Below the pieces are notes generated by a model. The model was not told the DNA's origin. It did no database searches and was given only the letters and a program-made list of their open reading frames with translations. A DNA stretch of 64,000 bases. It comes from Mobula hypostoma. Its lineage: Eukaryota. The stretch is taken from assembly GCF_963921235.1 (NCBI RefSeq), contig NW_026948145.1, forward strand, positions 558,001 to 622,000. Direction: 5' to 3'. The position numbers and the translations under genes were made by a program. Below, piece after piece: positions 4,101 through 44,028 of the stretch (the stretch's first letter is position 1; each line of letters opens with the position of its first letter).

Positions 4101-7100
4101 AACTTCGAGAGAGAGACAGAGGGGGAGAGAGGAGGGGAGATGGAGAACGGGAGGGGGGAGAAAGGGAGGGAAGGGGAGGGGGAGAAAGGGAGGGAAGGGG
4201 AGGGGGAGAAAGGGAGGGAAGGGGAGGGGGAGAAAGGGAGGGAAGGGGAGGGGGAGAAAGGGAGGGAAGGGGAGAAAGGGAGGGAAGGGGAGAAAGGGAG
4301 GGAANNNNNNNNNNNNNNNNNNNNNNNNNNNNNNNNNNNNNNNNNNNNNNNNNNNNNNNNNNNNNNNNNNNNNNNNNNNNNNNNNNNNNNNNNNNNNNNN
4401 NNNNNNNNNNNNNNNNNNNNNNNNNNNNNNNNNNNNNNNNNNNNNNNNNNNNNNNNNNNNNNNNNNNNNNNNNNNNNNNNNNNNNNNNNNNNNNNNNNNN
4501 NNNNNNNNNNNNNNNNNNNNNNNNNNNNNNNNNNNNNNNNNNNNNNNNNNNNNNNNNNNNNNNNNNNNNNNNNNNNNNNNNNNNNNNNNNNNNNNNNNNN
4601 NNNNNNNNNNNNNNNNNNNNNNNNNNNNNNNNNNNNNNNNNNNNNNNNNNNNNNNNNNNNNNNNNNNNNNNNNNNNNNNNNNNNNNNNNNNNNNNNNNNN
4701 NNNNNNNNNNNNNNNNNNNNNNNNNNNNNNNNNNNNNNNNNNNNNNNNNNNNNNNNNNNNNNNNNNNNNNNNNNNNNNNNNNNNNNNNNNNNNNNNNNNN
4801 NNNNNNNNNNNNNNNNNNNNNNNNNNNNNNNNNNNNNNNNNNNNNNNNNNNNNNNNNNNNNNNNNNNNNNNNNNNNNNNNNNNNNNNNNNNNNNNNNNNN
4901 NNNNNNNNNNNNNNNNNNNNNNNNNNNNNNNNNNNNNNNNNNNNNNNNNNNNNNNNNNNNNNNNNNNNNNNNNNNNNNNNNNNNNNNNNNNNNNNNNNNN
5001 NNNNNNNNNNNNNNNNNNNNNNNNNNNNNNNNNNNNNNNNNNNNNNNNNNNNNNNNNNNNNNNNNNNNNNNNNNNNNNNNNNNNNNNNNNNNNNNNNNNN
5101 NNNNNNNNNNNNNNNNNNNNNNNNNNNNNNNNNNNNNNNNNNNNNNNNNNNNNNNNNNNNNNNNNNNNNNNNNNNNNNNNNNNNNNNNNNNNNNNNNNNN
5201 NNGGGGAGGGGGGGATGGAGGGGGGAGGGAAGGNNNNNNNNNNNNNNNNNNNNNNNNNNNNNNNNNNNNNNNNNNNNNNNNNNNNNNNNNNNNNNNNNNN
5301 NNNNNNNNNNNNNNNNNNNNNNNNNNNNNNNNNNNNNNNNNNNNNNNNNNNNNNNNNNNNNNNNNNNNNNNNNNNNNNNNNNNNNNNNNNNNNNNNNNNN
5401 NNNNNNNNNNNNNNNNNNNNNNNNNNNNNNNNNNNNNNNNNNNNNNNNNNNNNNNNNNNNNNNNNNNNNNNNNNNNNNNNNNNNNNNNGAGAGAGAGAGG
5501 GAGCAGGAGATGGACAGAGGGAGGGGATGGAGAGAGGGAGGGAGGGGAGAGAGGGAGGGGGATGGAGGGAGGGGAGGGGAGATGGAGAGAGGGAGGGAGG
5601 AACAGATGGAGAGAAAAGGAGCAGGAGATGGAGAGAGGGAGGGAGCGGAGAGAAGGAGGGAGGGGAGGGAGAGGAGAGANNNNNNNNNNNNNNNNNNNNN
5701 NNNNNNNNNNNNNNNNNNNNNNNNNNNNNNNNNNNNNNNNNNNNNNNNNNNNNNNNNNNNNNNNNNNNNNNNNNNNNNNNNNNNNNNNNNNNNNNNNNNN
5801 NNNNNNNNNNNNNNNNNNNNNNNGAGGGAGGGAGGGGGGATGGAGAGAAGGAGGGAGGGGAGAGAGGGAGGGGGATGGAGAGAGTGATGGAGGGAGGAAC
5901 AGATGGAGAAAGAGGGAGAGGAGATGGAGAGAAGGAGGGTGGGAGAGATGGAGAGAGTGAGGGAGGAGGAGATGGAGGGAAGGTCGATGGAGAAAGGGAT
6001 GGAGGGAGGGAGGGGGATGGAGAGAGGGTGGGAGGGAGGGAAAATAGATTAGATTATGAGGACACGCAGTCCTCTTTTATTATCATTTAGTAATTCATGC
6101 ATTAAGAAATGATACAATATTCCTCCGGTGTGATATGACAGAAACAGAGGACAGATCAAGACTGAAAAACTGACAAAAACCACATAATTATAACATATAG
6201 TTACAACAGTGCAACAATACCGTAACTTGATGAAGAACAGTCCATGGGCACAGTAAAAAAAGGGAGGGAGGGGGGATGGAGAGGGGGAGCCGGAGATGGG
6301 GAGGGAGAGGTGAGATGGAGAGGGTGGGACGGTTCGGGAAGAGGAGGGGAGGGAGAGGTGAGATGGAGAGGGTGGGACGGTTCGGGAAGAGTGGGAGAGG
6401 GGGGGATGAGGCTGGATATCGGAAAGGGAAGAATAGAATGTGAGAATGAAGTGTTACGTACCCCATAACTGGATTGCCAAACCAGAAGAAATGGATCACT
6501 CAGTTGGAGTCTGGATTACTGGAACTAAGAAAGTTTTATTAAAGAAATAAGCAACACAGTACTCTAATCAAAAGGATAATAAGTACAACAGTTCAGCAAT
6601 GATAAACACACATGTACACAGATCTAGGATAATAGGATCAATCAAGCTCTAATCGTCGTCTAGGGGTAAATGACCAGTTTCAAAGTGACACAAAGTTCAG
6701 TTCGCAGTAATCGCTGTCGCCATGGGAGAGAGAGAGAGAGAGAGCGCGAATGAATATTCAAATCGGATTCCAAGCAGACCTTCGATATTCCTCACAGTCA
6801 GCTTTTGGGCGAGCCCTTTGTAATGTCTTCTGAGGTCACCGACTGTGACCCCTCCGTTTCAGATACGATTGTTCCTCTGCAGTGAACCTGGCACCCAGGC
6901 AAGGGCAGACATACACCAGGTTCCCGCCGATCGTACCTTTCCACCCTGTGCATCTATGGCTTGGTCCCGCGACCAGCCCTCCAAAAACTCCCACCGACTT
7001 GTGGGAGGTGCACCGCTTCCAGGGTCTCGTTACCTCGTGGTGTCGTGTGTGTCCTGCCTTAGCGAACCTGTCCCTTTTTATCCCCCTGCTGGGGTATCGC

Positions 7101-16100: not shown

Positions 16101-19100
16101 AGGCCCTCGACCTGGCTGGGTATGAGACCGAGCCCGGCTTCTGGAGCCAGCTGAAGCAGGAGCAGCACAGCCAGGCACCCGTGGGGCTGAGTGGCCATAG
16201 TGTCACCAAGCTGAGCGAGCAGCGGCTCTGGGTGGTGGGACGCGAGGGAGGGGTCCGCACCCAGAGGAGGTTTGCCAGCATCTTCCAGCTTCAAGTGGAC
16301 ATGCAGCACGGATGCTACCGGTGAGTCAGTCAGACACTGGCCTGAGCATTCTCAACCTTTCCTATCCACGTACTTGTCCAAGTGCCTTTTAAATGCTGTT
16401 AACTTAGCCGCCTCGACACAGCCCCCGGCAGCTTGGTTTGTATGCTGACCAGCCTCTGGGTGAAAAAGCTGTCTCAGGTTCCTATTAAATCTCTGTCCTC
16501 TGCTTCTTGGTCCTCCAACTGTGTGAAAAAGGCCATGCACATTCACCCTATCTATACCTCTGTAAGGTCATCTTTCATTCTCCTACGCTCCAGTGAAAAC
16601 AGTCCTTACCTGCTCAGCCTCTCTGCATCCCAGCAGGGTCTGCAGAAACCTCCCCTGCACTCTTTCCAGCTTAATGGCATCTTTCCTACAGCAAGTGAAT
16701 GACACACGGTATTCCAGATGCGGGCTCACCGACGTCCTGTGCAACGGTAACATATCTCAGTTTCTGCTCTCAGTGCTGTAACTGACGAAGGCCAACATGA
16801 CAGAAGCCCTTTTCACCACCCTTTCTGTGACTCCACTTTCAGGGAAATATGCACTTGTATTCCTGGATCCCTCTGTTCTACAACACTCCCCAGGGCCCTA
16901 TAGTTCACGGGGAAATTCCCCTGATCCCTCTGTTCTACAACACTCCCCAGGGCCCTATCGTTCACTAGAAAAGTCCAGCCCTCCTTTGAACAGAGAACAT
17001 AGAAATCTACAGCACATTACAGGCCCTTCAGCCCACAATATTGTGCTGACCATGTAGCCTACTCTAGAAACTGCCTAGAATTTCCCTAGCGCGTAGCCCT
17101 CTATTTTTCTAAGCTCCATGCACCTATCTTGAGGCTTGCAAAAGGCCCTATTGTATCCACTTCCACCACCGTCACTGGCAGTGCATTCCACGCACCCACC
17201 ACTCCCAGTGTGAAAAACTTACCCCCGACATCCCCTCGGTACCTATTTCCAAGCACTGGGGCTCATACACAAACTTAGATTGTTAGCTCATAGTCATAGT
17301 CATACTTTATTAATCCCAGGGGAAATTGGTTTTCGTTACAGTTGCTCCATAAATAATAAATAGTAATAGAACCATAAATAGCTAAATAGTAATATGTAAA
17401 TTATGAAATAAGTCCAGGACCAGCCTATTGGCTCAGGATGTCTGACCCTCCAAGGGAGGAGTTGTAAAGTTTGATGGCCACAGGCAGGAATGACTTCCTA
17501 TGACGCTCTGTGCTGCATCTCAGTGGAATGAGTCTCTGGGTGAATGTACTCCTGTGCCCACCCAGTACATTATGTAGTGACATACATCAAAGTTGCTGGT
17601 GAACGCAGCAGGCCAAGCAGCATCTATAGGAAGAGGCGCAGTCGACGTTTCAGGCCGAGACCCTTCGTCAGGACTAACTGAAGGAAGAGTGAGTAAGGGA
17701 TTTGAAAGCTGGAGGGGGAGGGGGAGATGCAAAATGATAGGAGAAGACAGGAGGGGGAGGGATAGAGCCGAGAGCTGGACAGGTGATAGGCAAAAGGGGA
17801 TACGAGAGGATCATGGGACAGGAGGTCCGGGAAGAAAGACGGGGGGGGGGGGACCCAGAGGATGGGCAAGAGGTATATTCAGAGGGACAGAGGGAGAAAA
17901 AGGAGAGTGAGAGAAAGAATGTGTGCATAAAAATGAGTAACAGCTGGGGTACGAGGGGGAGGTGGGGCCTAGCGGAAGTTAGAGAAGTCAATGTTCATAC
18001 CATCAGGTTGGAGGCTACCCAGACGGAATATAAGGTGTTGTTCCTCCAACCTGAGTGTGGCTTCATCTTTACAGTAGAGGAGGCCGTGGATAGACATGTC
18101 AGAATGGGAATGGGATGTGGAATTAAATTGTGTGGCCACTGGGAGATCCTGCTTTCTCTGGCGGACAGAGCGTAGATGTTCAGCAAAGCGGTCTCCCAGT
18201 CTGCGTCGGGTCTCACCAATATATAAAAGGCCACATCGGGAGCACCGGACGCAGTATATCACCCCAGTCGACTCACAGGTGAAGTGATGCCTCACCTGGA
18301 AGGACTGTTTGGGGCCCTGAATGGTGGTAAGGGAGGAAGTGTAAGGGCATGTGTAGCACTTGTTCCGCTTACACGGATAAGTGCCAGGAGGGAGATCAGT
18401 GGGGAGGGATGGGGGGGACGAATGGACAAGGGAGTTGTGTAGGGAGCGATCCCTGCGGAATGCAGAGGGGGGGGGAGGGAAAGATGTGCTTAGTGGTGGG
18501 ATCCCGTTGGAGGTGGCGGAAGTTACGGAGAATAATATGTTGGACCCGGAGGCTGGTGGGGTGGTAGGTGAGGACCAGGGGAACCCTATTCCTAGTGGGG
18601 TGGTGGGAGGATGGAGTGAGAGCAGATGTACGTGAAATGGAGGAGATGCGTTTAAGAGCAGAGTTGATAGTGGAGGAAGGGAAGCCCCTTTCTTTAAAAA
18701 ATGAAGACATGGATGGGAGATATTTGACCAAGATGGCATGCAACTTATACAGCATCCTCTTTTCAGACACCACCGTCAGAGAGTCCAGTTCCATCCCCAC
18801 AACATCACTGGCCTTACGAATGAGTTTGTTGATTCTGTTGGTGTCTGCTACCCTCAGCCTGCTGCCCCAGCACACAACAGCAAACATGATAGCACTGGCC
18901 ACCACAGACTTGTAGAACATCCTCAGCATCGTCCAGCAGATCTTAAAGGACCTCAGTCTCCTCAGGAAATAGAGATGGCTCTGGCCCTTCTTGTAGACAG
19001 CCTCAGTGTTCTTTGACCAGTTCAGTTTATTGTCAGTTTGTATCCCCAGGTATTCGTAATCCTCCACCATGTCCACACTGACCCCCTGGATGGAAACAGG

Positions 19101-22100
19101 GGTCACCGGTGCCTTAGCTCTCCTCAAGTCCACCACCAGCTCCTTAGTCTTTTTCACATTAAGCTGCAGATAATTCTGCTCACACCATGTGACAAAGTTT
19201 CCTACCGTAGCCCTGTACTCAGCCTCATCTCCCTTGCTGATGCATCCAACTATGGCAGAGTCATCCGAAAACTTCTGAAGATGACAAGACTACCTCTGCT
19301 AACAGCCATGTGGCCCAGTGGTGAGGCCATCTTTCGTACGGAATGTATGTCTAGCGTTGGTATGATTTGGAGTTCAATTAAACAGGAACATTGAGATGTT
19401 CCAATTAAAGGAACCTCGGTTTGAGTGAATGCTGTGTAAATACTGCCCATAGAGTTATCAGTAGTCCAGAAATGACAGATCGCACACCAACATAAAACTA
19501 TAAAGAAAGTATATTTACCAAATTTCAACTTTATCAAACAGCTAACAGAGAAACAAAAAGAAAAAAAGGGCCTATTACAGTTACACATAAACGTTGGAGC
19601 TCATTTGCGTAGTAGCTGTGAGTATTGCTTTACTCACAGCGCTGAATTCCCATCACCAAGCACAGGCAGAACGTCCCTTCTTGAAATTCTCTGCCTTGTG
19701 AAGCACTCCTTGCAATTGGGTCTTCCCTGGTGCTGTTCTGTCCATGCCCCCCGCCAAAAAGACCTCAAACCAGACTACTGTCCTTCAGAAATCTTACCCA
19801 GCCCAGCTCTCCAGAACCTTCTCACCATCCCACAATCCTGATTAGCTGACATTCTTAACTTGGACAGTGTGACTCCTTATCTTTTACCAGCAGGACAGAC
19901 TGTTTTTACAGAAACTGCTAAAATAAAATACCTCACGGCATAGCAATAGAAATCTTAACCAGGACATTATACACATCTCCACTATTGGACATCACCTGCT
20001 TTTCATGCCATCCATATCTTGCGAATCATGGTTTGTAGATTCCCATTCGAGTGGTGTGGGAGTGTAAGAAGGGAGGGGATAGGGTGGGGTGGAGCCACAT
20101 CACTTCCCCCATGACATCTTGCAGCGACCATGTGATGGGACTGTGGGCTTTGCGGTCTCTGACTGCCTGTCCCTTCCCAGGTACGAGGAGCAGGCCTCAC
20201 GCACAGCCTCGCGCTCTGGGCACTCAGCCACCCTGTGTCGGAGAGGGTGCCGAGGGAAGGCCACCTTTCAGCTGCTGCTGTTTGGAGGGCGTAACACACC
20301 TGGCTTTGAGGTGGCCGGGCACTGGAAGGAAGGGGTCGTGAAGGTCAGTGATGGTGAAAGGGGTTTGTGAAGGTCAGTGATGGGGAGGGGTTTGTGAGGG
20401 TCAGTGATGGGGAGGGGGTTTGTGAGGGTCAGTGATGGGGGAGGGGTTTGTGAGGGTCAGTGATGGGGGAGGGGGTTTGTGAAGGTCAGTGATGGCGAAA
20501 GGGGTTTGTGAGGGTCAGTGATGGGGAGGGGTTTGTGAGGGTCGGTGATGGGGAAGGGGTTTGTGAGGGTCAGTGATGGGGAGGGGTTTGTGAGGGTCAG
20601 TGATGGGGAGGGGGTTTGTGAGGGTCAGTGATGGGGAGGGGTTTGTGAAGGTCAGTGATGGGGAGGGGTTTGTGAGGGTCAGTGATGGGGGAGGGGTTTG
20701 TGAAGGTCAGTGATGGCGAAAGGGGTTTGTGAGGGTCAGTGATGGGGGAGGGGGTTTGTGAGGGTCAGTGATGGGGAGGGGTTTGTGAGGGTCGGTGATG
20801 GGGAAGGGGTTTGTGAGGGTCGGTGATGGGGGAGGGGTTTGTGAGGGTCAGTGATGGGGAGGGGGTTTGTGAGGGTCAGTGATGGGGGAGGGGGTTTGTG
20901 AGGGTCAGTGATGGGGAGGGGTTTGTGAGGGTCAGTGATGGGGAGGGGGTTTGTGAGGGTCAGTGATGGGGGAGGGGTTTGTGAGGGTCAGTGATGGGGG
21001 AGGGGGTTTGTGAGGGTCAGTGATGGGGAGGGGGTTTGTGTGGGTCAGTGATGGGGAGGGGTTTGTGAGGGTCAGTGATGGGGAGGGGGTTTGTGAGGGT
21101 CAGTGATGGGGGAGGGGGTTTGTGAGGGTCAGTGATGGGGAAGGGGTTTGTGAGGGTCAGTGATGGGGAGGGGTTTGTGAGGGTCAGTGATGGGGAAGGG
21201 GTTTGTGTGGGTCAGTGATGGGGGAGGGGTTTGTGAGGGTCAGTGATGGGGAGGGGGTTTGTGAGGGTCAGTGATGGGGGAGGGGGTTTGTGAGGGTCAG
21301 TGATGGGGAAGGGGTTTGTGAGGGTCAGTGATGGGGAGGGGTTTGTGAGGGTCAGTGATGGGGAGGGGTTTGTGAGGGTCAGTGATGGGGGAGGGGGTTT
21401 GTGAGGGTCAGTGATGGGGAAGGGGTTTGTGAGGGTCAGTGATGGGGAGGGGTTTGTGAGGGTCAGTGATGGGGAAGGGGTTTGTGAGGGTCAGTGATGG
21501 GGAGGGGTTTGTGAGGGTCAGTGATGGGGAAGGGGTTTGTGAGGGTCAGTGATGGGGGGAGGGGTTTGTGAGGGTCAGTGATGGGGAGGGGTTTGTGAGG
21601 GTCAGTGATGGGGAGGGGGTTTGTGAGGGTCAGTGATGGGGGAGGGGTTTGTGAGGGTCAGTGATGGGGGAGGGGGTTTGTGAGGGTCAGTGATGGGGAG
21701 GGGGTTTGTGTGGGTCAGTGATGGGGGAGGGGTTTGTGAGGGTCAGTGATGGGGAGGGGGTTTGTGAGGGTCAGTGATGGGGGAGGGGGTTTGTGAGGGT
21801 CAGTGATGGGGAAGGGGTTTGTGAGGGTCAGTGATGGGGAGGGGTTTGTGTGGGTCTGTGTTGGGGAAGGGGTTTGTGTGGGTCAGTGATGGGGGAGGGG
21901 TTTGTGAGGGTCAGTGATGGGGAGGGGGTTTGTGAGGGTCAGTGATGGGGGAGGGGGTTTGTGAGGGTCAGTGATGGGGAAGGGGTTTGTGAGGGTCAGT
22001 GATGGGGAGGGGTTTGTGAGGGTCAGTGATGGGGAGGGGTTTGTGAGGGTCAGTGATGGGGGAGGGGGTTTGTGAGGGTCAGTGATGGGGAAGGGGTTTG

Positions 22101-23537
22101 TGAGGGTCAGTGATGGGGAGGGGTTTGTGAGGGTCAGTGATGGGGAAGGGGTTTGTGAGGGTCAGTGATGGGGAGGGGTTTGTGAGGGTCAGTGATGGGG
22201 AAGGGGTTTGTGAGGGTCAGTGATGGGGGGAGGGGTTTGTGAGGGTCAGTGATGGGGAGGGGTTTGTGAGGGTCAGTGATTGGGGGAGGGGTTTGTGAGG
22301 GTCAGTGATGGGGGAGGGGGTTTGTGAGGGTCAGTGATGGGGAAGGGGTTTGTGTGGGTCAGTGATGGGGAGGGGTTTGTGAGGGTCAGTGATTGGGGGA
22401 GGGGTTTGTGAGGGTCAGTGATGGGGAGGGGTTTGTGAGGGTCAGTGATGGGGGAGGGGTTTGTGATGGTCAGTGATGAGAATGTGGTCAGGAAGATCAG
22501 AGTTGGGAGGGAGGGGATCTTGCTCAGTGATGTTGAGGAGGAAGGATGGAGGGCGTTGTGGTCAGTGAGTAGAGGGGGAAGGGAATGGGGAGGGGTGGGG
22601 GAGGGGGATGAGGAGGGATCGGGAAGAGTGATTGGGAAGAAGGTGTGAAGATGGTGGTGGTGGTGGGGGGAATTATCCTGGAAGGGTCAGCAGGGATAAG
22701 CAGTGGGAGTAAGGAGCCTGCTGGATTGGATGGAATGGGAGAATGGAGAGGACAGAGTTCTGTGAGGAGACAGAGAATGTGGGAAATAAACAATCCTTAG
22801 AATGGAAGGGGAAGACCATGATGGAAGTGTGCAAAAGAGTAGGAGGGAGAGAGGAGACGGGAAGGAAAGAAGGGAGAGTGCGGCTCTCGGGAGGGTGGAT
22901 GACAGGATAGTCCCATTGATACTAACCACCTCTCTGATGCCCCACAGTCCCAGCAACCCTCTCCCCAAGGCTTGGTTGGGAAGTTCAGCTCCCTCATCGC
23001 TGACGAGGTGGTGACTCCTGGCAGCCCAACACCTCGCCGACACCACTCCACGGTGCAGGTGGGACCCTTCACCCTGTTGCATGGGGGCGAATCATTCAAC
23101 AAGGCCATTGACACAATCTGCAGCGACCTCTACATCTACGACACACGTGAGTGTCAGCTATCGTGACAGGGAGCTTCACCGCATGTCTGACCCGTGCCCT
23201 GGGAGTGTGTGATGGGACAGTGTAGAGGGAGCTTCACCGCATGTCTAACCTGTGCCCTGGGAGTGTGTGATGGGACAGTGTAGAGAGTTTCACTCTGACT
23301 CGTGCGCTGGGAGTGTGTGATAGGCCAGGGTTCACAGTGAGTATTTGATCCCAATCTCTTGTTTCCTCAGGATCTTGCGCCGGGCAGTGGTTCCGGTTCC
23401 CCGCCTCTGACGTAGAGCTGAAGAGAGTTGGACATCGGATGGTAGTGCTAGGAGAGCAGCTGTGTGTGATCGGAGGTCTGGGACCAGGCGGCAAGCACTG
23501 TCCCCCTGATATTTACACCCTGGACCTCCACTGCTGA
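4091..23537 (+). CDS. KLHDC9: Kelch domain-containing protein 9, about 361 aa; join(4091..4096,15770..16320,20181..20343,22948..23146,23371..23537)
   Basis: Translation matches KLHDC9 as recalled: LLARAFHS, RSHH..WLLVVGGWDG.RRL, GREGG..TQRR, SRSGH, LLLFGG, RHHS..VGPF..HGGE, TICSDLYIYDT, KRVGHR. All junctions are GT-AG and in phase; total 1086 nt. Confidence 0.92.
4108..6440 (+). repeat. GA/G-rich low-complexity and tandem repeat tract with assembly gaps (N runs 4305-5202, 5234-5488, 5680-5823)
   Basis: Units such as GGGGAGAAAGGGAGGGAAGGGGA; long ORFs here are artefacts. Confidence 0.9.
6452..7359 (-). mobile_element. Solo LTR (908 bp) with 4-bp TSD GAAG
   Basis: Termini TGTTACG...CGTCACA; GAAG at 6448-6451 and 7360-7363; strand inferred from an AATAAA on the minus strand near 6535. 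Confidence 0.8.
7920..10740 (+). mobile_element. Near-complete degenerate CR1 LINE ORF2 (APE endonuclease + RT) with 3' tail
   Basis: GGGVELLIR, FYRPPNS, KSRGPD, NYRQVSLTSVVGK, GVPQGSVLGP, FADETK, EYCAQFWSP; several stops; tail TTTCTATGTTTCTATAA. Confidence 0.9.
10925..11840. mobile_element. Two decayed Penelope-like 3' fragments in opposite orientations
   Basis: ATGCTGGAGGAACTCAGCAGGCCAGGC end motif shared with the copies at 17580 and 41400. Confidence 0.55.
12790..14760. mobile_element. Rex1/Babar-like LINE RT fragments (+ at about 12790-13180; - at about 13350-14760)
   Basis: RMLFLDYSSSFNT, KLADDTT, KTKELVV, HKLFQLLPS, RLRDSFFHQAIRL. Confidence 0.75.
13456..13763. mobile_element. Mariner-type MITE (308 bp) with TA TSD
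   Basis: TA|CGAGGGACGATTGATAAGTTTGTGGCCTAAGGTAGAAGG ... CCTTCTACCTTAGGCCACGAACTTATCAATCACCCCTCG|TA. Confidence 0.85.
14990..15720 (-). mobile_element. Decayed Penelope-like element fragment
   Basis: FTCTISATSLPFLDL and downstream sequence resemble the RT/GIY-YIG copy at 39900-41490. Confidence 0.6.
15770..16320 (+). CDS. KLHDC9: KLHDC9 exon 2
   Basis: Polypyrimidine tract + ttgcag|GGC; kelch repeats; ends CCG|gtgagt. Confidence 0.93.
17580..18710 (-). mobile_element. 5'-truncated Penelope-like element with GIY-YIG endonuclease domain
   Basis: FTCESTGVIYCVRCSRCGLLYIGETRRRLGDRFAEHL...RLEEQHLIFRLGSLQPDGMNIDF. Confidence 0.9.
17640..17675 (-). ncRNA. Minimal hammerhead ribozyme motif in the Penelope 3' end
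   Basis: Minus strand reads AGTC-CTGACGA-AGGGTCTCGGCCT-GAAA-C-GTC-GACT: stem I AGTC/GACT, CUGANGA and GAAA cores, palindromic ACGU stem III, GUC cleavage triplet. Confidence 0.7.
20181..20343 (+). CDS. KLHDC9: KLHDC9 exon 3
   Basis: cccag|G YEEQASRTASRSGHSA..LLLFGGRN..AGHWKEGVVK|gtcagt. Confidence 0.92.
20331..22478 (+). repeat. G-rich minisatellite, 27-29 bp unit (GGGGTTTGTGAGGGTCAGTGATGGGGA), roughly 75 copies, in KLHDC9 intron 3
   Basis: Directly visible tandem array whose first unit overlaps the exon 3 donor. Confidence 0.95.
22948..23146 (+). CDS. KLHDC9: KLHDC9 exon 4
   Basis: Branch-like ACTAAC at 22921; cacag|SQQPSP..RHHSTVQVGPFTLLHGGE..DLYIYDT|gtgagt. Confidence 0.92.
23165..23350 (+). 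repeat. Intronic satellite (GGGAGTGTGTGATGGGACAGTGTAGAGGGAGCTTCAC..TGTCTGACCCGTG), about 3 units
   Basis: Same family as 38836-39305 and 59325-61705. Confidence 0.85.
23371..23537 (+). CDS. KLHDC9: KLHDC9 last exon; AATAAA at 23565-23570
   Basis: cctcag|..QWFRFPASDVELKRVGHR..VIGGLG..IYTLDLHC*. Confidence 0.92.
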
Positions 23538-35360: not shown

Positions 35361-38300
35361 GATGGGAAATCATTCCCTGCCTACCCCTCATCTCTGTACC
35401 ACCCATGGCTGCTAGTCCTTCCTCGGACTCCTACCAACTTGCCCATCGCACTGATTCAGCCCCATGGTCCGTAACCACCTGCTCCTGGACCCTGACCCCA
35501 GCATCTTGGGACTTTGACCCATCACTCAAACTTTCAACACCCCTACCCTGGTTCTCTCCCGATCCCACTCCCTTATTAGCCCTACCCTGATCCACTGCCT
35601 CCCCACTTGACTTCTCCCATCACCACACTCCCTTCCCCTGTTACATCCTGTCCTGTGTGTCCCTCGCTTGGTCCCTCTACGATCTCAGTGCCCAGGGACA
35701 GACCCATCTGTGTGGGAAGGGTCTTTTGCTTGGGGTAGGGAGGGACCCACTATACAGTGCCTCTAAAAAGTATTCAATCCCCTTTGAAATTTTCATGTTT
35801 TATGGTTTTACAACATTGAATCACAGTAAATTTAGTTTGGATTTAAACGCAAACAACAGGAATTCTGCAGATGCTGGAAATTCAAGCAACACACATCAAA
35901 GTTGCTGGTGAACTCAGCAGGCCAGGCAGCACCTTCAAGGGTCTCAGCCTGAAACGTCGACTGCACCTCTTCCTACAGATGCTGCCTGGCCTGCTGAATT
36001 TAGTTTGGCTTTTTTTTGAGACTGAACAACAGAAGAGGACGCTTTCAAGTAAAAGTGAAAACAGATCTCTACAATGTGATCTAAATCAATTACAAATATA
36101 AAACACAAAATAATTTATTGCATAAGTATTCACCCCATTCAAGTCAGTGTTTAGTAGATGCACTAATGGCAGCATTGAGTCTGTGTGGATAGGTCTCGAT
36201 CACCTTTGCACATCTGGACACTGCAATTTTTCCTCATTCTTCTTTACAAAACTGCTCAAACTCTGTCAGATTGCATTGGGATCATGAGTGAACAGCCCTT
36301 TTCAAGTCCAGCCACAAATTGCTTGGGGTCATTGTCTTGCTGGAAAACAAATCTTCTCCCAAGTCACAGTTCTCTTGCAGATTGCATCATGTTTTCCTTT
36401 AGGATTTCCCTGTATTTTGATGCATTCATTTTACCCTGTACCTTCACAAGCCTTGTAGGGCCTACTGCAGAGAAACATCCCCACAGCATGATACAGCCAC
36501 CACTATGCTTCACGGCAGAGATGGGGTATTTTTGAAGATGTGCGATGTTTGGCTTATGACAAACATAGCATTTAGCCCGATGGTCAAAAAGCTCAAATTT
36601 GGTTTCATCAGATCATTGAACCATCTTCCAGCTGACTTCAGAGTCTCCCAAATGCCTTCTGGTAAGCTCTAGCTGAGATTTCATGTAGGTTTTTTTCAAC
36701 AGTGGCTTTTTCTTTGCCACTCTTCCATAAAACTGACTACTGAAGCACTTGGGCAACAGTTATTGTATGCACAGTCTCTCCCATCTCAGCCTCTGAACCT
36801 TGTAACTCCTCCAGAGTTGTCATGGGTCTCTGTGGCCTCCCTCACTCGTTCCCTTGCACAGTCACTCAGTTTTTGAGGATGGTCTCCTTGAGGCAAATTT
36901 ACTGCTGTGTCATATTCTTTCCATTTCTTAATGATTGACTTAACCAAGGGATACTCAGTGACTTGGAAATGTTCTTGTATCCTTCTCCTGACTTGTACTT
37001 TTCAATAACCTTTTGGTGGAGTTGCTTGGAGTGTTCTTTTGTCTTCATGGTGTAGGTTTTGCCAGGATACTGACTCTCCAGTAATTGGACCTTCCAGATA
37101 CAGGTGTGTTTTCACTATTCACTTGAAACACCTTGACTCCAAAAACAGATCTCCATTTAATTAATTACGTACATGACTTATAAAACCAAGTGGCTGCACC
37201 AGTGATCTTCTGGTGTGTCATATTAAAGGAGGTGAATACTTAAGCAATCAATTATTTTGTGTTTTATATTTCTAATCAGTTTAGATCACTTTGTACAGAT
37301 CTGTTTTCACCTGGACACAAGAGTCTTTTTCTGTTGATCAGTATCAAAAAAAGTCAAATTCAATCCACTGTGATTCAAAATTGTAAAACAATAAAACATG
37401 AAAACTTCCTGGGGTGGGATGATTACTTTTTATAGGCACTGTGTTTGAGTTTGCTGGAGTCTATTTATAAGGGATGTACATTATTTGAAAGTATGGTGGT
37501 ATTTGTGTGAGGGCTGTGGGAGAGAGGGAGGGAGGGTGAGGCTGTTTACTGACAAACTCTCCTTTCCTCTCCTGGGGCAGGACCTTGGCCATGTCCAGCT
37601 CCCGGAGGGCCCTGATTGGAGTGGGCCAGATGACCGCCTCCGCAGACAAGGAGCACAATTTCCAGCAGTGCCAGGAGCTGGTGAGGGTGGGGGCAGCCCG
37701 TGGGGTCCGCATGCTCTTCCTGCCTGAGGCCTTCGATTACATCGCACCCAGCACTGAGGAAACCCTCCACCTCGCCGAGGGTCTTGAGGGGGAGCTGGTA
37801 GAGAGATACCGGCAGCTGGCCAGGTAGGCCTCCTTGACCCTCTGTATTTGCCACTTATCTCCGTTCCCCCAATCCCCCTCCATCTCCCTCATTCCCCTTG
37901 TCCCCTCAGTACTCCTCATTCCCCTTGTCCCCTCAGTACTCCTCATTCCCCATGTTCCCCTCCATCCCCCTCATTCCCTCCTTCATTCCCTTCATTCTCA
38001 CTGTCCCTCTCCATCTCCACTGTCCTCCTCCAACCCCTAATTCCCTCCACCCCCTCATTCCTTCCTTGCCCTCGTCCTCACTGTCCCTCACCATCTTCAC
38101 TGTTCTCTCCAATCCCTCATTCCCTCCATCCCTCTTCCCCTAACACAGTCTCCCCTCGTTCTCCTCTGTCTCATTCGTCCCTCCATCTCTCTCGTTCCTC
38201 TCCGACCCGATCGTCGCCTTTGTCAGCCTCGTCCCCCTCTGTCCCTCTTCATCCCTCAGTTCCCATTAACAACCTTCCCCATCCCTCTGCATTGTCTCTC

Positions 38301-41300
38301 CCTCGATTCCCCACACCTCTTGCCTCCTTCGCCCTCTCTCAAAGGCCTGTACCTGTCTGCAGGGAGTCGAGGCTCTGGCTGTCCCTGGGTGGGTTCCACG
38401 AACGAGGACCACGCTGGGATCAGGACCGGCGAATCTACAATACCCACCTGCTACTTGACGACTCGGGTAAGAGGGATTGGCAGATGGAATAGCCGTGTGG
38501 GCTGGTGGGGGGCAGGAGGTCCCGAATCAGGGAAGGACGGGGAGAAACAGCCCTGTGTCTGGGACAGATTTGATTGTGAGGACAAATCCAGATTGATGTT
38601 TTCTGTCTGCTGTCACTGGGGGTGGTGTGACCATAGGAAGGTGGAATTAAAACCAGGAGGCAGAGCTACAAAGCATATTAATCCTGTTGTATTTAGGACA
38701 AACTGTGGGGCTCTACCGAAAGACCCACCTCTTCGATGTGGATCTCCCGGGTCAGGTCTCACTCAAGGAGAGCAGCTTCACCATTCCGGGACCACAAATT
38801 GAGCTGCCGGTTACAACTCCAGTTGGCAAGGTAAATGTGATGGGACTGTGTCTGACCCGTGTCCTGGGAGTGTGTGATGGGACAGTGTAGAGTGAGTTTC
38901 ACTCTGTGTCTGACCCTGGGAGTGTGTGATGGGACAGTGTAGAGTGAGCTTCACTCTGTGTCTGACCCGTGCCCTGGGAGTGTGTGATGGGACAGTGTAG
39001 AGTGAGCTTCACTCTGTGTCTGACCCTGGGAGTGTGTGATGGGACAGTGCGGAGGGAGTTACACTCTGTGTCTGACCCGTGCCCTGGGAGTGTGTATTGG
39101 GATAGTGTAGAGTGGGTGTGTGAAGGGACAATGTAGAGGGAGATTCACTCTGTGTCTGACCCCTGTCCTGGGAGTGCGTATTGGGATAGTGTAGAGGGGG
39201 TGTGTGAAGGGACAATGTAGAGGGAGATTCACTCTGTGTCTGACCCGTTCCCTGGGGGTGTGTGATGGATAGGGTAGAGGGAGATTCACTCTGTGTCTGA
39301 CCTGTGTTGTGCTTTCCTACCACAGATTGGACTTGCTATTTGTTATGATCTTCGATTCCCAGAAATATCTCGTACTCTAGCTGATGCTGGAGCAGAAATT
39401 CTTACATTCCCATCTGCTTTTACATTAACGACTGGCATGGCACATTGGGAGGTGAGGCTTCATGAGAGTAATTTCACTCTGTCAAATTTCAGGTTTGAAG
39501 AAAAGTGCTTAATAGTGATTTGTGTGTGTGTGAAATAAGGTGAAAACTTCAAAGACTTGGCATCTTTTAGATTATATCATCGTTCAGAGGAGGGATCACA
39601 GAAACGTAAAGAATACAAGAGCCATGATCAGTGCTGATGATGGCTGGACAGACCAGTGGCTTATTTGCTCACAAATGACCATCAAAATCATGTGGAGGAG
39701 TGGAGTGAAAAAGAACGTGAGCCGTCCCGGGTTCAACATTGAGAGCCTAAAAGACACAGTGAAGGTACAATATCTCCAGGTTGCCCTTTCTGAAAGATTC
39801 CCAAAGCAGTATCTGGAGGACATTGAAGCACACTGGACTACACTGAGGATTACCATCCTTGATACTTGTGAAAATATCATTAGATACAAGACCTGAAAAA
39901 ACAAAGTTTTTATGTTTGGCAGAACTGGTATTCTCACTTAATAACTTCTCTTTTGGCTCTTCCCACTTTCTTCAGACCAAGGGTGTAGCTATGGGCACTC
40001 GCATGGGCCCCAGCTATGCCTGCCTCTTTGTTGGTTATGTGGAACAGTCTATGCTCCAAACCTATACTGGTGCTGCTCCCCAGCTTTTCGTTCGCTACAT
40101 TGACGACTATATTGGCGCTGCTTCCTGCACCCATGCTGAGCTTGTCAATTTCATCGACTTTGCTTCTAGCTTCCACCCAGCCCTCAGATTCACTTGGTCC
40201 ATCTCGGACACTTCTCTCCCCTTTCTCGATCTCTCGGTCTCCATCTCTGGAGACAGACTGTCCACTGACATCTTCTATATGCCCACTGACTCTCATAACT
40301 ACCTTGAGTATACCTCTTCCCACACTGCCACATGGAAAAATGCTATTCCTTATTCCCAGTTCATCCATCTCCGCTGCATCTGCTCCCAGGATGAGGCTTT
40401 CCGTTCCAGGACATCTCAAATGTCCTCTTTCTTTAAGGATCGTGGTTTCCCTTCTGTCGTCATCAATGATGCCCTCACCCGCATCTCCTCCATTTCCTGC
40501 ACTTTGGCCCTCACCCCATCCTCCCGTCACCACAACAGGGACAGTTTCCCTTGTCCTTACCTACCACCCCACCAGCCTCCGAATCCAGCACATTATCCTC
40601 CGCAACTTCCGCCACCTTCAACAGGACCCCACCACTAAACACATCTTTCCCTCTCTACCCCTCTCCGCTTTCCGCAGGGATCGGTCCCTCCGCGACTCCC
40701 TGGTCCACACATCCCTCCCCACGGATCTCCCACCCGGCACTTATCCCTATAAGCATAAGTGCTACACCTGTCCCTACACCTCCTCTCTCACCACTATTCG
40801 GGCCACAAACAGTCCTTCCAAGTGAGGCAACACTTGTGAGTCTGTTGGGGTGATCGATTGCATCCGGTGCTCCCAACGCAGATTGGGGGACCGCTTCGTC
40901 GAGCACCTCTGCTCCGTTCGCCGCAACAGACAGGATCTCCCGGTAGCTGCCCACTCCAACTCTGCTTCACGTTCCCATTTGGATATGTCCATACATGGCC
41001 TCCTCTACTGCCACGATGAGGCCAAACTCAGGTTGGAGGAGCAACACCTCATACACCGTCTGGGTAGTCTCCAGCCACTTGGCATAAACATTAAATTCTC
41101 CAACTTCCGGTAATTCCCTCCCCCTCCCAGTTTCACTCTGCACCCTCCCCCAGCTGCCTATCACCTCCCTCATGGTTCCCCCTCCTTCTACTACCCATTG
41201 TGCTTTCCCTTATTCCTTCTTCACCTTTCCTGCCTATCGCCTCCCTGCTTCCCCTCCCCCACCACTTTATCTTTCCCCTTACTGGTTTTTCACCTGGAAC

Positions 41301-44028
41301 CTACCAGCCTTCTCCTTCCCACCCTCCCCCACCTTCTTTATAGGGCCTCTGCCCCCTCCCTCTACAGTCCTGACGAAGGGTTCCAGCCCAAAACGTTGAC
41401 TGATGGTTTCCACGGATGCTGCCTGACCTGCTGAGTTCCTCCAGCGTGTTGTGCATGTTTCTTTAACCCCAGCATCTGCAGATCATTTTGGTTTGATGAA
41501 AATGACAATGAAATAGAAGGGCTAATCAACAAAAAAGGAAAGCTTTCTGTGCCTGGCAGAAGGACATTAATAACAAGGCTAAAAAAGCAGCCCATTTCAA
41601 AGCAAAGGCTTTAGTCTAGTTTAGAGTAAGGGGAATAAAGAATCAGTGGTAGACTGAGAGGGCCCCAGAAACACGGCAGCCTGCTGACTCTGGTGATATC
41701 AGGGTTTCTTTATTGCCACCGAGGCCGTGGCCTAAACTTCCTTCACACCAAAGATGGACAAAGGCTGCTAAAGGACAATGATGCCATCAATTCTGATGGC
41801 AGGAACACTTTCAGGAGCTACTTAATCCTAACACCACTGTTGATATTGAAGTTCCCACAACGACCCATGAAGGAGGATGTGAGTAAGCCTCCCAGTATCA
41901 AAGAGGTGCAGATAGCTTACAAGAAATTGAGGAACAACAAGGCCACCAGGCCTGATGGAATTCCAGCAGAAATTCTCGAGGAAGGTGACATAGAACTTTT
42001 AAATCCTATTCATGACCTGCTGGGACCAGGAGAAGATTCTGGCTGAACTCAGGGATGCCCTGATTGTCACACTCTTCAAAGAGGGTGATAAAGCTGACTG
42101 CAGAAACCATAGTGGCATCTCTCTCCTCTCTACAACAGGAAAGATACTCACCTGAATTTTATGTGACTGGTTTTCACCTCTGGCAGAAGATCTCCTGCCT
42201 GAGTCTCAGTGTGGCCTTCATCCAGCCAGAGGAGTACCTGATGTGATATTTACAGCACATCAATTGCAGGAGCAAGCTCGGGAACAAACTCTCCCATATG
42301 GCTTTCATAGACTTTACAGAAGCATTTGACTCTGTATCTTGTCCTTTAGCAGGTACTGTCCAAATTCAGGTGCCCGGAGAAATACCTCAAGGTCCTGCAG
42401 CTCTTACACAGTGATATGAGTGCAACAGTCATTAGCAGCAGCAGCCCTGAAACAGCTCCTTTTAAGGTTGAGACCAGGGTTAAACAGGGGTGCATCGTTG
42501 CCCCAACTCTGTTTGCCAATTTCATTGCAACCATTCTTCACCTCACAGGCCAAGACCTCCCATAAGCAGTCTAGATTCTCTATAGGACCTTAACAGGTTC
42601 AAGACAAAGAGCAAGGTGTCAACTATTTCTATCATGCAGCTCCAATATGCAGACAACAACATAGTAGCTTGCTGTAAAGAGGATCTGCAGTGTACAATGG
42701 ATGCTTTTGCCAGAGCATACAAGCTCCTGGGACTTGATCTAAACATCAAGAAAACCCAAGTCCTGCACCAAACTGCTCCAAATCAAGCTCCTAAACCTCC
42801 AACCATCCAAATTGACAACGTCCCTCTGGAGGACACTTGTCATTGTCCGTATTTGGGCAGCCTTCTTTCTTCAAGAGCCAACATTACATTGAAATAACTC
42901 ACAGAATAGGCTGTGTGAGTGGAGCTGTTGCCAGCCTGAGAAAGAGGGTTTTTGAAGATCAAGATAGCAAGACCAACTCAAGCTTCTGGTCTATAAAGTT
43001 AAAGTCCTCACCTACTTACTATATGGAGTGGAGTCATGGACAACATACAGCAGGCACATAAAATCCCACTTACCATCAAAGTTTCCTCTGAGAGCTGAAG
43101 AACGGGCATACTAACTCCAGCATCCTGTTGGAAGCTGACATTAACCCCATAGCCACAATCATCACTCAACACCAACTGCGATGGGTCGGCCACATCATCC
43201 GTATCCCTGACTCCTGCCTCCCTAAAGGACTCCTGTTCAGCCAACTCAAGGATGCAAAGCGACTCCTGAAGGCCAGAAAAAGCAGCTCAAGGACAACATC
43301 AAGGCCCACCTGAAGAAGTACTACATCAACCTGAATGGGTGGGAGAAATTATCACAGGACAGGAAAAGCTGGAGAAGGACTGTCTATGAGGGGACTGCAC
43401 AGCTCAAAGAATACCTCCACTGTGCCGCTGAAACTAAGCGGCTTCAACGTAAGGAGAGACTGGGAAAGGTCCAACCAGCTACATCCAGCACCCTCTCAAT
43501 GCCCTACACCTGCCAACACTGCAAAGGACTTGTAGATCACAGATCGGCCTCTTCAGTTATCTCAAGACCCACAAGTGACCAGATCAACACCAGGAAAGGA
43601 ATTGTACTCGACTACGAGTAATTGACGTGCGTGTGCGTGTGTCTCGGGTGTGAGGGAATGTTCCTTAGTAGTGTATCCTGTGTGCGTGCTGAGTGTGTGG
43701 ACTCCCACAGTGTGACCCACTGTTGCCCTGCCACTCATCCTGTTCTCTCTGGCAGACTCTCCTGCGGAGCCGGGCGATCGAGACACAGTGCTATGTGGTT
43801 GCGGCTGCACAGACAGGCCGGCACAATGACCGCCGCTTGTCCTTCGGCCACTCCATGGTGGTGGACCCCTGGGGCTGTGTGTTGGCCCAGTGTGGACAGG
43901 GCCCCGGTCTCTGCTGTGCTGAGGTCGACCTGGACTACCTGCGTCAGGTGCGCCAACAGATGCCCGTGACCCAACACCGGCGGAACGATCTCTACGGGAG
44001 TGTGGGTGAACCTCCATTCCTAAGCTGA
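35070..44028 (+). CDS. NIT1: Deaminated glutathione amidase (nitrilase 1), about 304 aa; join(35070..35104,37581..37823,38363..38466,38697..38830,39326..39451,43756..44028)
   Basis: Nitrilase triad in FLPEAFD, YRKTHLFDV and ICYDLRFPE; also PSAFT..AHWE, RAIETQCYV, GHSMVVDPWG; in-phase GT-AG junctions; AATAAA at 44111-44116. Confidence 0.93.
35755..37441 (-). mobile_element. Decayed Tc1-like DNA transposon in NIT1 intron 1, with a Penelope-end fragment (about 35847-35998) inside one TIR
   Basis: TA|CAGTGCCT...AGGCACTG|TG with long inverted termini; minus-strand transposase motifs AVKHSGGCIMLWGCF and FQQDNDPK. Confidence 0.85.
37581..37823 (+). CDS. NIT1: NIT1 exon 2 (second ATG at 37591)
   Basis: TLAMSSSRRALIGVGQMT..FLPEAFDYIA..QLA AG|gtaggc. 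Confidence 0.92.
38363..38466 (+). CDS. NIT1: NIT1 exon 3
   Basis: ESRLWLSLGGFHERG..IYNTHLLLDDS|gtaaga. Confidence 0.94.
38697..38830 (+). CDS. NIT1: NIT1 exon 4
   Basis: YRKTHLFDVDLPG..PVTTPVGK|gtaaat. Confidence 0.94.
38836..39305 (+). repeat. Intronic satellite filling NIT1 intron 4
   Basis: Tandem GGGAGTGTGTGATGGGACAGTGTAGAG..TTCACTCTGTGTCTGACCC units. Confidence 0.92.
39326..39451 (+). CDS. NIT1: NIT1 exon 5 (catalytic Cys)
   Basis: IGLAICYDLRFPE..PSAFTLTTGMAHWE|gtgagg. Confidence 0.95.
39530..43625 (+). mobile_element. Degenerate RTE-clade LINE in NIT1 intron 5, interrupted by a Penelope-like element
   Basis: WHLLDYIIV, NNKATRPDGIPAE, VKQGCIVAPTLF, LQYADNN, QLRWVGHIIRIPD, terminal CxxC..H motif. 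Confidence 0.85.
39900..41490 (+). mobile_element. 5'-truncated Penelope-like element (RT + GIY-YIG)
   Basis: QTKGVAMGTRMGPSYACLFVG..RYIDD..LPFLDL; RRLGDRFVEHL..LGINIKF. Confidence 0.9.
43756..44028 (+). CDS. NIT1: NIT1 last exon
   Basis: TLLRSRAIETQCYVVAAAQ..GHSMVVDPWG..HRRNDLYG..*. Confidence 0.95.
   Translation, partial: TLLRSRAIETQCYVVAAAQTGRHNDRRLSFGHSMVVDPWGCVLAQCGQGPGLCCAEVDLDYLRQVRQQMPVTQHRRNDLYGSVGEPPFLS

What the first reader, a model, noticed from the sequence alone, without database searches (positions are those of the whole stretch)
38831..39325. An intronic satellite family that ends exactly at, and appears to supply, the branch point in three different introns
Seen: the same ~50-bp satellite lies in KLHDC9 intron 4 (23165-23350), NIT1 intron 4 (38836-39305) and at 59325-61705. 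Its unit contains TCTGAC, a match to the vertebrate branch consensus yUnAy. Each array stops at this motif, which is directly followed by a polypyrimidine tract and AG. NIT1 has CTGAC with the A at 39300 (exon at 39326). KLHDC9 has a degenerate TTGAT with the A at 23348 (exon at 23371). The third has CTGAC at 59333-59337 on the minus strand, about 30 nt from the AG once the CR1 insertion is removed. In both known genes the G-rich strand is the sense strand and the array starts within about 20 nt of the donor. Inference: this is a dispersed, strand-biased repeat that colonises or rebuilds introns while carrying its own branch point and G-runs, rather than neutral filler.
Basis: partly seen in the sequence, partly recalled or inferred. 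Interest (0 to 1): 0.78.

Follow-up and report, generated by a model that had tools for sequence, protein, structure and literature searches.

The report
Intron-filling minisatellite holding a branch point
A G-rich 52-58-base tandem repeat found at three places in this devil-ray window fills two short, old introns (NIT1, KLHDC9), and in NIT1 it now contains the only plausible splicing branch point. This looks like an ordinary repeat that grew until splicing constraints stopped it, not an element built to colonise introns.

Summary
The repeat is real. One 52-58-bp G-rich minisatellite forms exactly three arrays: 23163-23341 (+), 38836-39307 (+) and 59329-61712 (G-rich on minus).

- **NIT1:** the exon junction is confirmed. 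Satellite makes up 472 of the intron's 495 nt. Only two strict yUnAy motifs lie in the 40-nt AG-free zone, CTGAC (A39300, 25 nt from the intron end) and TTCAC (A39288). Both are in the last repeat unit, so the branch point very probably lies in satellite sequence. This is in silico only.
- **KLHDC9:** firm repeat homology stops at 23341. The TTGAT motif lies in a 29-nt tail that aligns only weakly.
- **Third array:** no exon, gene or transcript could be shown there.

The broader interpretation is not supported. The KLHDC9 intron is old, because an electric-ray isoform diverges at the same codon. Start phases differ among arrays, and two motifs per unit is not significant (P=0.09). Each array carries private variants, which indicates growth in place. 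AG dinucleotides in the unit restrict where an array can end close to an acceptor. The C-rich strand would add an acceptor-like site to most units, which could explain a sense-strand bias.

Genome-wide strand and end-phase tests could not be run. Other satellite-filled introns, built from different repeats, were noted elsewhere in this genome.

The parts
38831..39325 (+). NIT1 intron (phase 0, 495 nt), donor AAG|GTAAAT, acceptor CCACAG|A
   Evidence: Flanking exons map to consecutive residues of solved nitrilase homologues: 1EMS 163|164, 7ELF 161|162, 4H5U 197|198. Sequence read.
38836..39307 (+). Satellite array in NIT1, about 8.5 units with 110-bp and 84-bp higher-order copies, G-rich on the sense strand. 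Takes up 472 of the 495 intron nt.
   Evidence: TRF, nhmmer, segmentation. Local alignment to the consensus ends at 39307, phase 57. Firm 5' start at 38846, preceded by an 11-nt unit fragment from 38836.
39285..39301 (+). Candidate branch points in the last repeat unit: TTCAC (A39288, 37 nt from the intron end) and CTGAC (A39300, 25 nt)
   Evidence: These are the only strict yUnAy motifs in the 40-nt AG-free stretch before the acceptor. 83% of mapped human branch points lie 21-34 nt from the intron end (PMC2367711).
39308..39325 (+). Non-satellite pyrimidine tract plus acceptor AG (18 nt, 72% pyrimidine)
23147..23370 (+). KLHDC9 last intron (phase 1, 224 nt), donor CAC|GTGAGT
   Evidence: Junction DTR|S in the NCBI M. 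hypostoma protein P0001, mapped on the window by tblastn. Sequence read.
23163..23341 (+). Satellite array in KLHDC9, about 3 units, G-rich on the sense strand, with a private CACCGCATGTCT variant
23342..23370 (+). The 29-nt intron tail holding TTGAT (A23348, 22 nt from the intron end) and the pyrimidine tract. Either a decayed repeat unit or original intron sequence.
   Evidence: Strict yUnAy with no AG downstream. Only a weak gapped alignment to the unit, score 9.5.
59329..61712 (-). Third array, 2.4 kb, about 45 anchored segments including A-only modules. Ends at phase 55, with the CTGAC A at 59334.
   Evidence: No exon or transcript shown nearby.
57828..59306 (-). 5'-truncated CR1-type LINE with an open reverse-transcriptase frame, lying 22 nt downstream of the third array
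   Evidence: 483-aa ORF at 57919-59370, sequence. Loose ends of repeat-family contigs at 57823-57830 and 59306 mark its limits.

Best explanation
This is an ordinary dispersed G-rich minisatellite of the devil-ray genome. It entered two pre-existing short introns and then grew in place by slippage or unequal exchange. Selection on splicing decides which expansions survive.

**Constraint on the array end (inferred).** The sense-strand unit has AG dinucleotides only at phases 6-33. Phases 34-58, plus phases 1-5 of the next unit, form a 30-nt AG-free stretch that holds two consensus branch motifs, TTCAC and CTGAC. An array that comes within about 20 nt of an acceptor is therefore tolerated only if it ends after those motifs. 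The last unit then serves as the branch site.

**Constraint on orientation (inferred).** On the opposite strand most units would present an acceptor-like CCCATCACACACTCCCAG|G, so that orientation should be selected against in short introns.

**Shown.** The repeat, the exon borders, the geometry, growth in place, and the age of the KLHDC9 intron.

**Inferred.** Which A is actually used, that selection shaped the array ends, and that any strand bias exists.
For: - Three arrays of one family.
- Private variants shared by several units within each array and absent from the others: 2/0/0, 0/3/0, 0/3/0, 0/0/11, 0/0/10.
- NIT1 intron: 472 of 495 nt are satellite. Only A39288 and A39300 are strict yUnAy motifs in the AG-free zone.
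- Their distances of 25 and 37 nt compare with the 21-34 nt range for 83% of mapped human branch points (PMC2367711).
- The role of AG exclusion zones is documented (PMC1431707).
- Acceptor-like sites (YAG with at least 65% pyrimidine upstream): 0 sense against 7 antisense in the NIT1 array, and 1 against 31 in the third array.
- The KLHDC9 intron position is shared with Narcine, whose isoform X2 diverges at the same codon. M. birostris isoform X2 uses the same acceptor.
- Earlier notes on this genome describe other introns filled by unrelated satellites that stop short of the splice signals.
Against: - No branch point was mapped.
- Only two introns are available.
- The third array ends at almost the same phase (55 against 57) and is followed by a 22-nt pyrimidine-rich spacer although no exon is known there. 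That could hint at a property of the repeat itself. With two arrays, a match this close has roughly a 1-in-10 to 1-in-5 chance.
- Orthologous introns of other rays could not be fetched, so when the array arrived and what the ancestral branch site looked like are both unknown.
Confidence: 0.7

Rival explanations
1. One reading: the family is a strand-biased, intron-seeking or intron-rebuilding repeat. It brings its own branch point and G-runs and is enriched with its end 18-35 nt upstream of acceptors genome-wide.
For: - Both genic arrays are G-rich on the sense strand, start 5-16 nt after the donor and end just before the pyrimidine tract.
- The NIT1 and third arrays end at phases 57 and 55.
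- The sense strand has 2 yUnAy motifs and the antisense strand none.
- Each unit carries three G triplets. By general knowledge, G triplets are intronic splicing enhancers in short vertebrate introns.
Against: - Only two introns; both being sense has a chance of 0.25.
- The motif count is not significant (P=0.09).
- In KLHDC9 the motif lies outside firm homology.
- Start phases are 41 (or 9), 22 and 4, so there is no common terminus.
- The 3' flanks of the NIT1 and third arrays are not significantly alike (p about 0.13).
- The third site has no demonstrated exon.
Confidence: 0.13
2. The repeat does not supply the working branch point. Splicing uses original intron sequence (the KLHDC9 tail with TTGAT) or, in NIT1, a non-consensus or more distant site, and the array is a passive filler.
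For: - The best KLHDC9 candidate, A23348, lies in a 29-nt tail that aligns only weakly with the unit.
- Vertebrate branch sites are degenerate (PMC2367711).
Against: - In NIT1 only 18 nt before the acceptor are non-satellite, and their A residues lie 1-6 nt from the intron end, too close for a branch site.
- Everything further upstream is repeat. Any branch point at a normal distance is therefore repeat-derived.
Confidence: 0.1
3. An introner-like origin: insertion of the repeat created these introns, with the donor derived from the unit's GGGAGTGT (compare GTGAGTGT at the KLHDC9 donor).
For: - The first 8 nt of the KLHDC9 intron differ from the unit start by one base.
- Amphioxus KLHDC9 has no intron at this position.
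Against: - The intron position is shared with Narcine, and the same acceptor is used in M. birostris, so the intron is far older than arrays that are still being homogenised.
- No target-site duplications or terminal repeats were seen.
- The NIT1 donor GTAAAT does not resemble the unit.
- A survey of 3,325 genomes found no sign of introner gain in vertebrates (PMC9860276).
Confidence: 0.02

Closest known systems
Intronic minisatellites (VNTRs) that swell introns up to the splice signals. Other cases were noted in this same genome, for example the TUFM intron that is about 98% satellite.
   Same: Head-to-tail units of tens of bases, higher-order copies, growth in place, and array limits just inside the essential splice signals while the gene stays intact.
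   Different: Here one family occurs at three loci within 40 kb. In NIT1 it has gone one step further than stopping short: the branch site itself now lies in repeat sequence.
Splice signals supplied by mobile elements (Alu-type exonization, where an inserted repeat provides the pyrimidine tract, acceptor or branch site)
   Same: A repeated sequence supplies a degenerate splice signal by chance resemblance. Orientation matters because one strand is pyrimidine-rich and acceptor-like.
   Different: No new exon is created. The repeat sits in a constitutive intron of a housekeeping gene and would serve the normal acceptor. This comparison rests on general knowledge and was not tested here.
Introner elements (PMC9860276; PMC12130899)
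   Same: Similar sequence makes up almost the whole of introns in unrelated genes and lies next to both splice sites.
   Different: The introns are old, copies are arrays of varying length rather than discrete near-identical elements, and there are no target-site duplications or terminal repeats. Introners have not been found in vertebrates.
Boundary-spanning minisatellites that copy a host splice site (noted elsewhere in this genome; also the 28-bp array at 20328-22478 in KLHDC9)
   Same: A tandem repeat abutting an exon-intron border in the same genome and even in the same gene.
   Different: Those units are copies of the host's own exon end or splice site. This unit is the same in different genes and contains no exon sequence.

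Membership tests
Dispersed minisatellite family | Head-to-tail units of about 10-100 bp | tested here: met
   52/58-bp units with 26-bp sub-modules.
Dispersed minisatellite family | The same unit at several unlinked or separated loci | tested here: met
   Three arrays in the window. Genome-wide copy number could not be measured (blank).
Dispersed minisatellite family | Local amplification or homogenisation, seen as array-private variants and higher-order repeats | tested here: met
   Private variants per array. 110-bp and 84-bp higher-order copies in NIT1.
Introner elements | Intron positions are lineage-specific recent gains | tested here: not met
   The KLHDC9 intron position is shared with Narcine (P0004 diverges at the same codon), and the acceptor is used in M. 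birostris. The age of the NIT1 intron could not be tested.
Introner elements | Discrete near-identical element copies with defined ends (often target-site duplications or terminal inverted repeats) | tested here: not met
   Arrays of 179, 472 and 2384 bp. Start phases are 22, 41 (or 9) and 4. Flanks are not significantly alike.
Introner elements | The element carries or recruits the splice sites | tested here: inconclusive
   The branch motif lies in the repeat. Donor and acceptor dinucleotides lie outside firm repeat homology.
Repeat-derived branch point | A consensus branch motif inside repeat sequence, 18-40 nt from the acceptor, with no AG in between | tested here: met
   NIT1 A39300 (25 nt) and A39288 (37 nt), within a 40-nt AG-free stretch.
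Repeat-derived branch point | The lariat is shown to form at that adenosine | not testable with these tools
   The only runs offered were contigs that behave like low-coverage DNA. No raw RNA reads were available.
Boundary-spanning (splice-site-copying) minisatellite | The unit contains the host gene's own exon end or splice site | tested here: not met
   The same unit occurs in NIT1, KLHDC9 and the third locus, and no exon sequence is in the unit.

The most novel reading that the evidence does not exclude
The family could be a vertebrate repeat whose sense strand is pre-adapted for life in introns: a branch motif, an AG-free 3' part and G-triplets. It would then be systematically retained in sense orientation with its last unit acting as the branch site of many short introns. 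That would amount to a satellite that can overwrite and replace intron-internal splice signals genome-wide.
Probability: 0.08. Interest if true: 0.75.

Novelty: new member of a known kind. Interest (0 to 1): 0.3.

Why it matters
The NIT1 case is a tidy natural illustration of how little unique sequence a vertebrate intron needs. Five bases at the donor and 18 at the acceptor remain, and everything between them, including the probable branch site, is satellite.

It also yields a concrete, testable rule. The positions of AG dinucleotides within a repeat unit predict at which phase an array may abut an acceptor, and in which orientation. If that rule held genome-wide, it would show how splicing constraints shape satellite growth in a repeat-rich genome. 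As it stands, this is one well-supported intron, one ambiguous intron and one unsupported site.

Tried and rejected
- **More genomic copies.**
  - A protein word search with a satellite-encoded ORF gave no hit at E<=0.001.
  - An exact 25-mer scan of metagenome contigs gave 0 matches.
  - A text search of papers for the unit gave 0.
  - Earlier findings searched by sequence gave nothing.
- **RNA family.** Rfam at gathering thresholds found nothing in the whole window.
- **Transcripts at the third array.** Runs X1-X4 are contigs labelled 'RNA?'. LINE depth was 10^4-10^5 and unique pieces were at depth 3-5, which looks like low-coverage DNA. They cannot show or exclude an exon.
- **Orthologous introns.**
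  - Look-ups of the M. hypostoma and Mustelus KLHDC9 genes returned gene tables but no DNA, because the files were too large.
  - The M. birostris, Narcine and Rhinoraja proteins were not on record.
  - Only the amphioxus locus was fetched.
  - A search with the NIT1 exon-5 ORF returned five short partial nitrilase-family proteins (56-69% identical), none of them from a ray.
- **Shared 3' arm.** The similarity between the NIT1 and third-array flanks (CTTTCCTAC against CTTTCTTAC) is not significant (shuffle p=0.14, composition-matched p=0.13).
- **LINE origin.** A 59-bp duplicated LINE fragment at 16850-16990 aligns weakly with the unit. Its score of 16 is reached by 6% of window pieces, so it was not accepted.
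- **Hammerhead motif.** This was considered because Penelope-borne hammerheads are common in this genome. It was not followed up because the unit lacks the CUGAUGA core and Rfam was blank.
- **NIT1 gene-structure paper.** The 1998 paper could not be opened.

Full report
**What is there**

Tandem Repeats Finder and an nhmmer scan with two repeat units as query show one repeat family at exactly three places in the window:
- 23163-23341 (+),
- 38836-39307 (+),
- 59329-61712 (G-rich strand is the minus strand).

Segmentation gives a unit of 58 bp. On the G-rich strand it reads CTGGGAGTGTGTGATGGGACAGTGTAGAGGGAGCTTCACTCTGTGTCTGACCCGTGTC. There is also a 52-bp form that lacks the last six bases. In the third array the first 26 bases (module A) often stand alone.

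The organism is a devil ray. The KLHDC9 exons of the window translate to the NCBI protein 'kelch domain-containing protein 9-like [Mobula hypostoma]' at 99-100% identity. This agrees with earlier notes on this genome.

**Are these introns?**

*NIT1.* The exon ending at 38830 matches C. elegans NitFhit (1EMS) up to residue 163. The exon starting at 39326 matches from residue 164. The same continuity is seen in 7ELF (161|162) and yeast NIT2 4H5U (197|198). The intron is 38831-39325, 495 nt, phase 0.

*KLHDC9.* The annotated protein P0001 reads ...LYIYDTR|SCAGQWF... and maps on the window. The intron is 23147-23370 (224 nt), with donor CAC|GTGAGT.

*The third array.*
- No exon could be shown.
- PFDN2 lies on the minus strand at 33.6-34.7 kb, and NIT1 ends near 44025.
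- No DEDD or UFC1 peptide was found between 44 and 64 kb.
  - Those runs are contigs whose LINE-family depth is 10^4-10^5. Exact unique pieces, such as 56669-57139, stand at depth 3-5.
  - They behave like low-coverage DNA, not RNA.
  - No spliced contig and nothing over 57640-57826 was seen. This neither proves nor excludes an exon.
- With the CR1 copy (about 57828-59306; limits from loose ends) removed, the first AG would follow A59334 by about 35 nt.

**Where the arrays end**

Local alignment of the flanks to a cyclic consensus gives these 3' ends:
- NIT1: 39307, phase 57 of 58.
- Third array: 59329, phase 55.
- KLHDC9: 23341, phase 33.

The CTGAC adenosine is at phase 50, so two arrays end 5-7 nt after it, at the end of a whole unit. 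In KLHDC9 the TTGAT motif (A23348) sits in a 29-nt tail that aligns with the unit only with several gaps (score 9.5). It may be a decayed unit or original intron sequence.

The 5' ends start at phases 41 (or 9, counting an 11-nt fragment), 22 and 4. The arrays therefore do not share element-like termini.

The 3' flanks of the NIT1 and third arrays look alike by eye (CTTTCCTAC against CTTTCTTAC), but the similarity is not significant (p about 0.13).

**The branch point**

*NIT1.*
- The last upstream AG is at 39282, which leaves a 40-nt AG-free stretch before the acceptor.
- The only strict yUnAy motifs in that stretch are TTCAC (A39288, 37 nt from the intron end) and CTGAC (A39300, 25 nt). Both lie in the last repeat unit.
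- Only 18 nt of non-repeat sequence precede the acceptor, and their adenosines are 1-6 nt from the intron end.
- In human housekeeping introns 83% of mapped branch points lie 21-34 nt from the intron end, and the consensus is yUnAy (PMC2367711).
- The NIT1 branch point is therefore almost certainly repeat-derived, most likely at A39300. This is an inference from geometry; no lariat was observed.

*KLHDC9.* The best candidate is TTGAT (A23348, 22 nt, no AG downstream), in the ambiguous tail.

**Is it more than chance?**
- The sense unit has two strict yUnAy motifs, against 0.54 expected from shuffles (P=0.09). The antisense unit has none.
- Two of two genic arrays being sense has a chance of 0.25.
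- Two arrays ending within 2 nt of the same phase has a chance of roughly 0.1-0.2.

None of these results is compelling taken singly.

**A simpler explanation**

The AG dinucleotides of the unit lie at phases 6-33. Phases 34-58 plus phases 1-5 of the next unit form a 30-nt AG-free stretch that contains both branch motifs.

An AG between branch point and acceptor is normally excluded (PMC1431707). An array that comes within about 20 nt of an acceptor can therefore be tolerated only if it ends after phase 38-50. That is where the NIT1 array ends.

On the other strand most units would present CCCATCACACACTCCCAG|G. This has 72% pyrimidine upstream, the same as the true NIT1 acceptor. Acceptor-like sites number:
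- 7 in the NIT1 array against 0 on the sense strand,
- 31 in the third array against 1 on the G-rich strand.

Antisense arrays in short introns would thus be a ladder of decoy acceptors and should be removed by selection. Both the end phase and the orientation follow from survivorship, without the repeat having any intron-seeking property.

**History**
- Each array has variants shared by several of its own units and absent from the other arrays:
  - CACCGCATGTCT in KLHDC9,
  - GAGTGAG and GAGATT types in NIT1,
  - CACACTGTCTC and GGGAACYTCAC types in the third array.
- NIT1 also shows 110-bp and 84-bp higher-order copies. The arrays therefore grew in place.
- The KLHDC9 intron is old.
  - Isoform X2 of the electric ray Narcine bancroftii (P0004) diverges and stops exactly at the DTR codon.
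  - M. birostris isoform X2 (P0002) uses the same acceptor.
  - Amphioxus has no intron there, so the intron arose, or was lost in amphioxus, long before the array.
- This argues against an introner-like origin. A survey of 3,325 genomes also reported no sign of introner gain in vertebrates (PMC9860276).
- The age of the NIT1 intron and the state of the orthologous introns in other rays could not be checked, because the vertebrate assemblies were too large to be served.

**Context**

Earlier notes on this genome describe many minisatellites. Some fill introns and 'stop just short of the splice signals', for example a 30-kb TUFM intron. Others copy splice sites. I did not check those notes. They fit the view that this genome's introns are commonly invaded by tandem repeats and that splice signals set the limits.

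**Verdict**
- The statement that the satellite supplies the branch point is well supported in silico for one intron.
- The broader model, a repeat that colonises or rebuilds introns carrying its own branch point, is not supported by what could be tested. Its decisive genome-wide test could not be run with these tools.
- I rate this a new member of a known kind, an intronic minisatellite that has come to hold a degenerate splice signal. Interest is modest.

Noticed in passing
window 20328-22478: A 2.1-kb array of 77 copies of a 28-bp G-rich unit (92% matches) starts 16 nt inside the 3' end of a KLHDC9 exon (exon 20179-20343) and fills most of the next intron.
   Followed up: no
window 22574-22617, 37875-38139, 62013-62782: A second set of short repeats appears to share a GGAATG(A/G)(A/G)GGGG-like core. 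This was judged by eye and not aligned. One such array lies 300-700 bp from each of the three 58-bp arrays. It is in the same orientation at two of them and opposite at NIT1, and exons lie in between at two loci. This may simply be chance in a repeat-rich genome.
   Followed up: no
window 57828-59306 (minus): A 5'-truncated CR1-type LINE with an uninterrupted 483-aa reverse-transcriptase frame and a (CTATGTTT)-type tail. Relatives of it stand at very high depth in all four runs laid.
   Followed up: partly
window 16850-16990 (minus): A LINE coding fragment (...RALGSVVEQRD...) carries a 59-bp tandem duplication. Its unit shares ordered blocks (CCTGGGGAGTGT, ACAG, AGGGA, CCCGTG) with the 58-bp satellite, but the alignment score is not significant.
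   Followed up: partly
window 38892 (+): Three NIT1 repeat units carry AGA|GTGAG(T/C). The first is a 5-of-7 donor-like site 61 nt downstream of the true donor. Using it would shift the reading frame. Whether it is ever used could not be checked.
   Followed up: no
runs X1-X4: Runs listed as 'RNA?' behave like low-coverage genomic DNA. Repeats stand at depth 10^4-10^5, and unique exact pieces are only 100-450 nt long at depth 3-5.
   Followed up: partly
L001:1001-2693 (Branchiostoma lanceolatum KLHDC9): The amphioxus gene has an intron near residue 224/225, but the last 123 residues are encoded without interruption. The ray's last intron therefore has no counterpart there.
   Followed up: partly
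window 4305-5823: Three runs of N are flanked by GA/GGA-rich simple repeats (4122-4304, 5490-6041).
   Followed up: no
P0002 (Mobula birostris KLHDC9 isoform X2): The predicted isoform joins ...HHSTVQ directly to the last exon in another reading frame. This implies an alternative donor inside exon 4 (near 23056 in this window) paired with the same acceptor.
   Followed up: no
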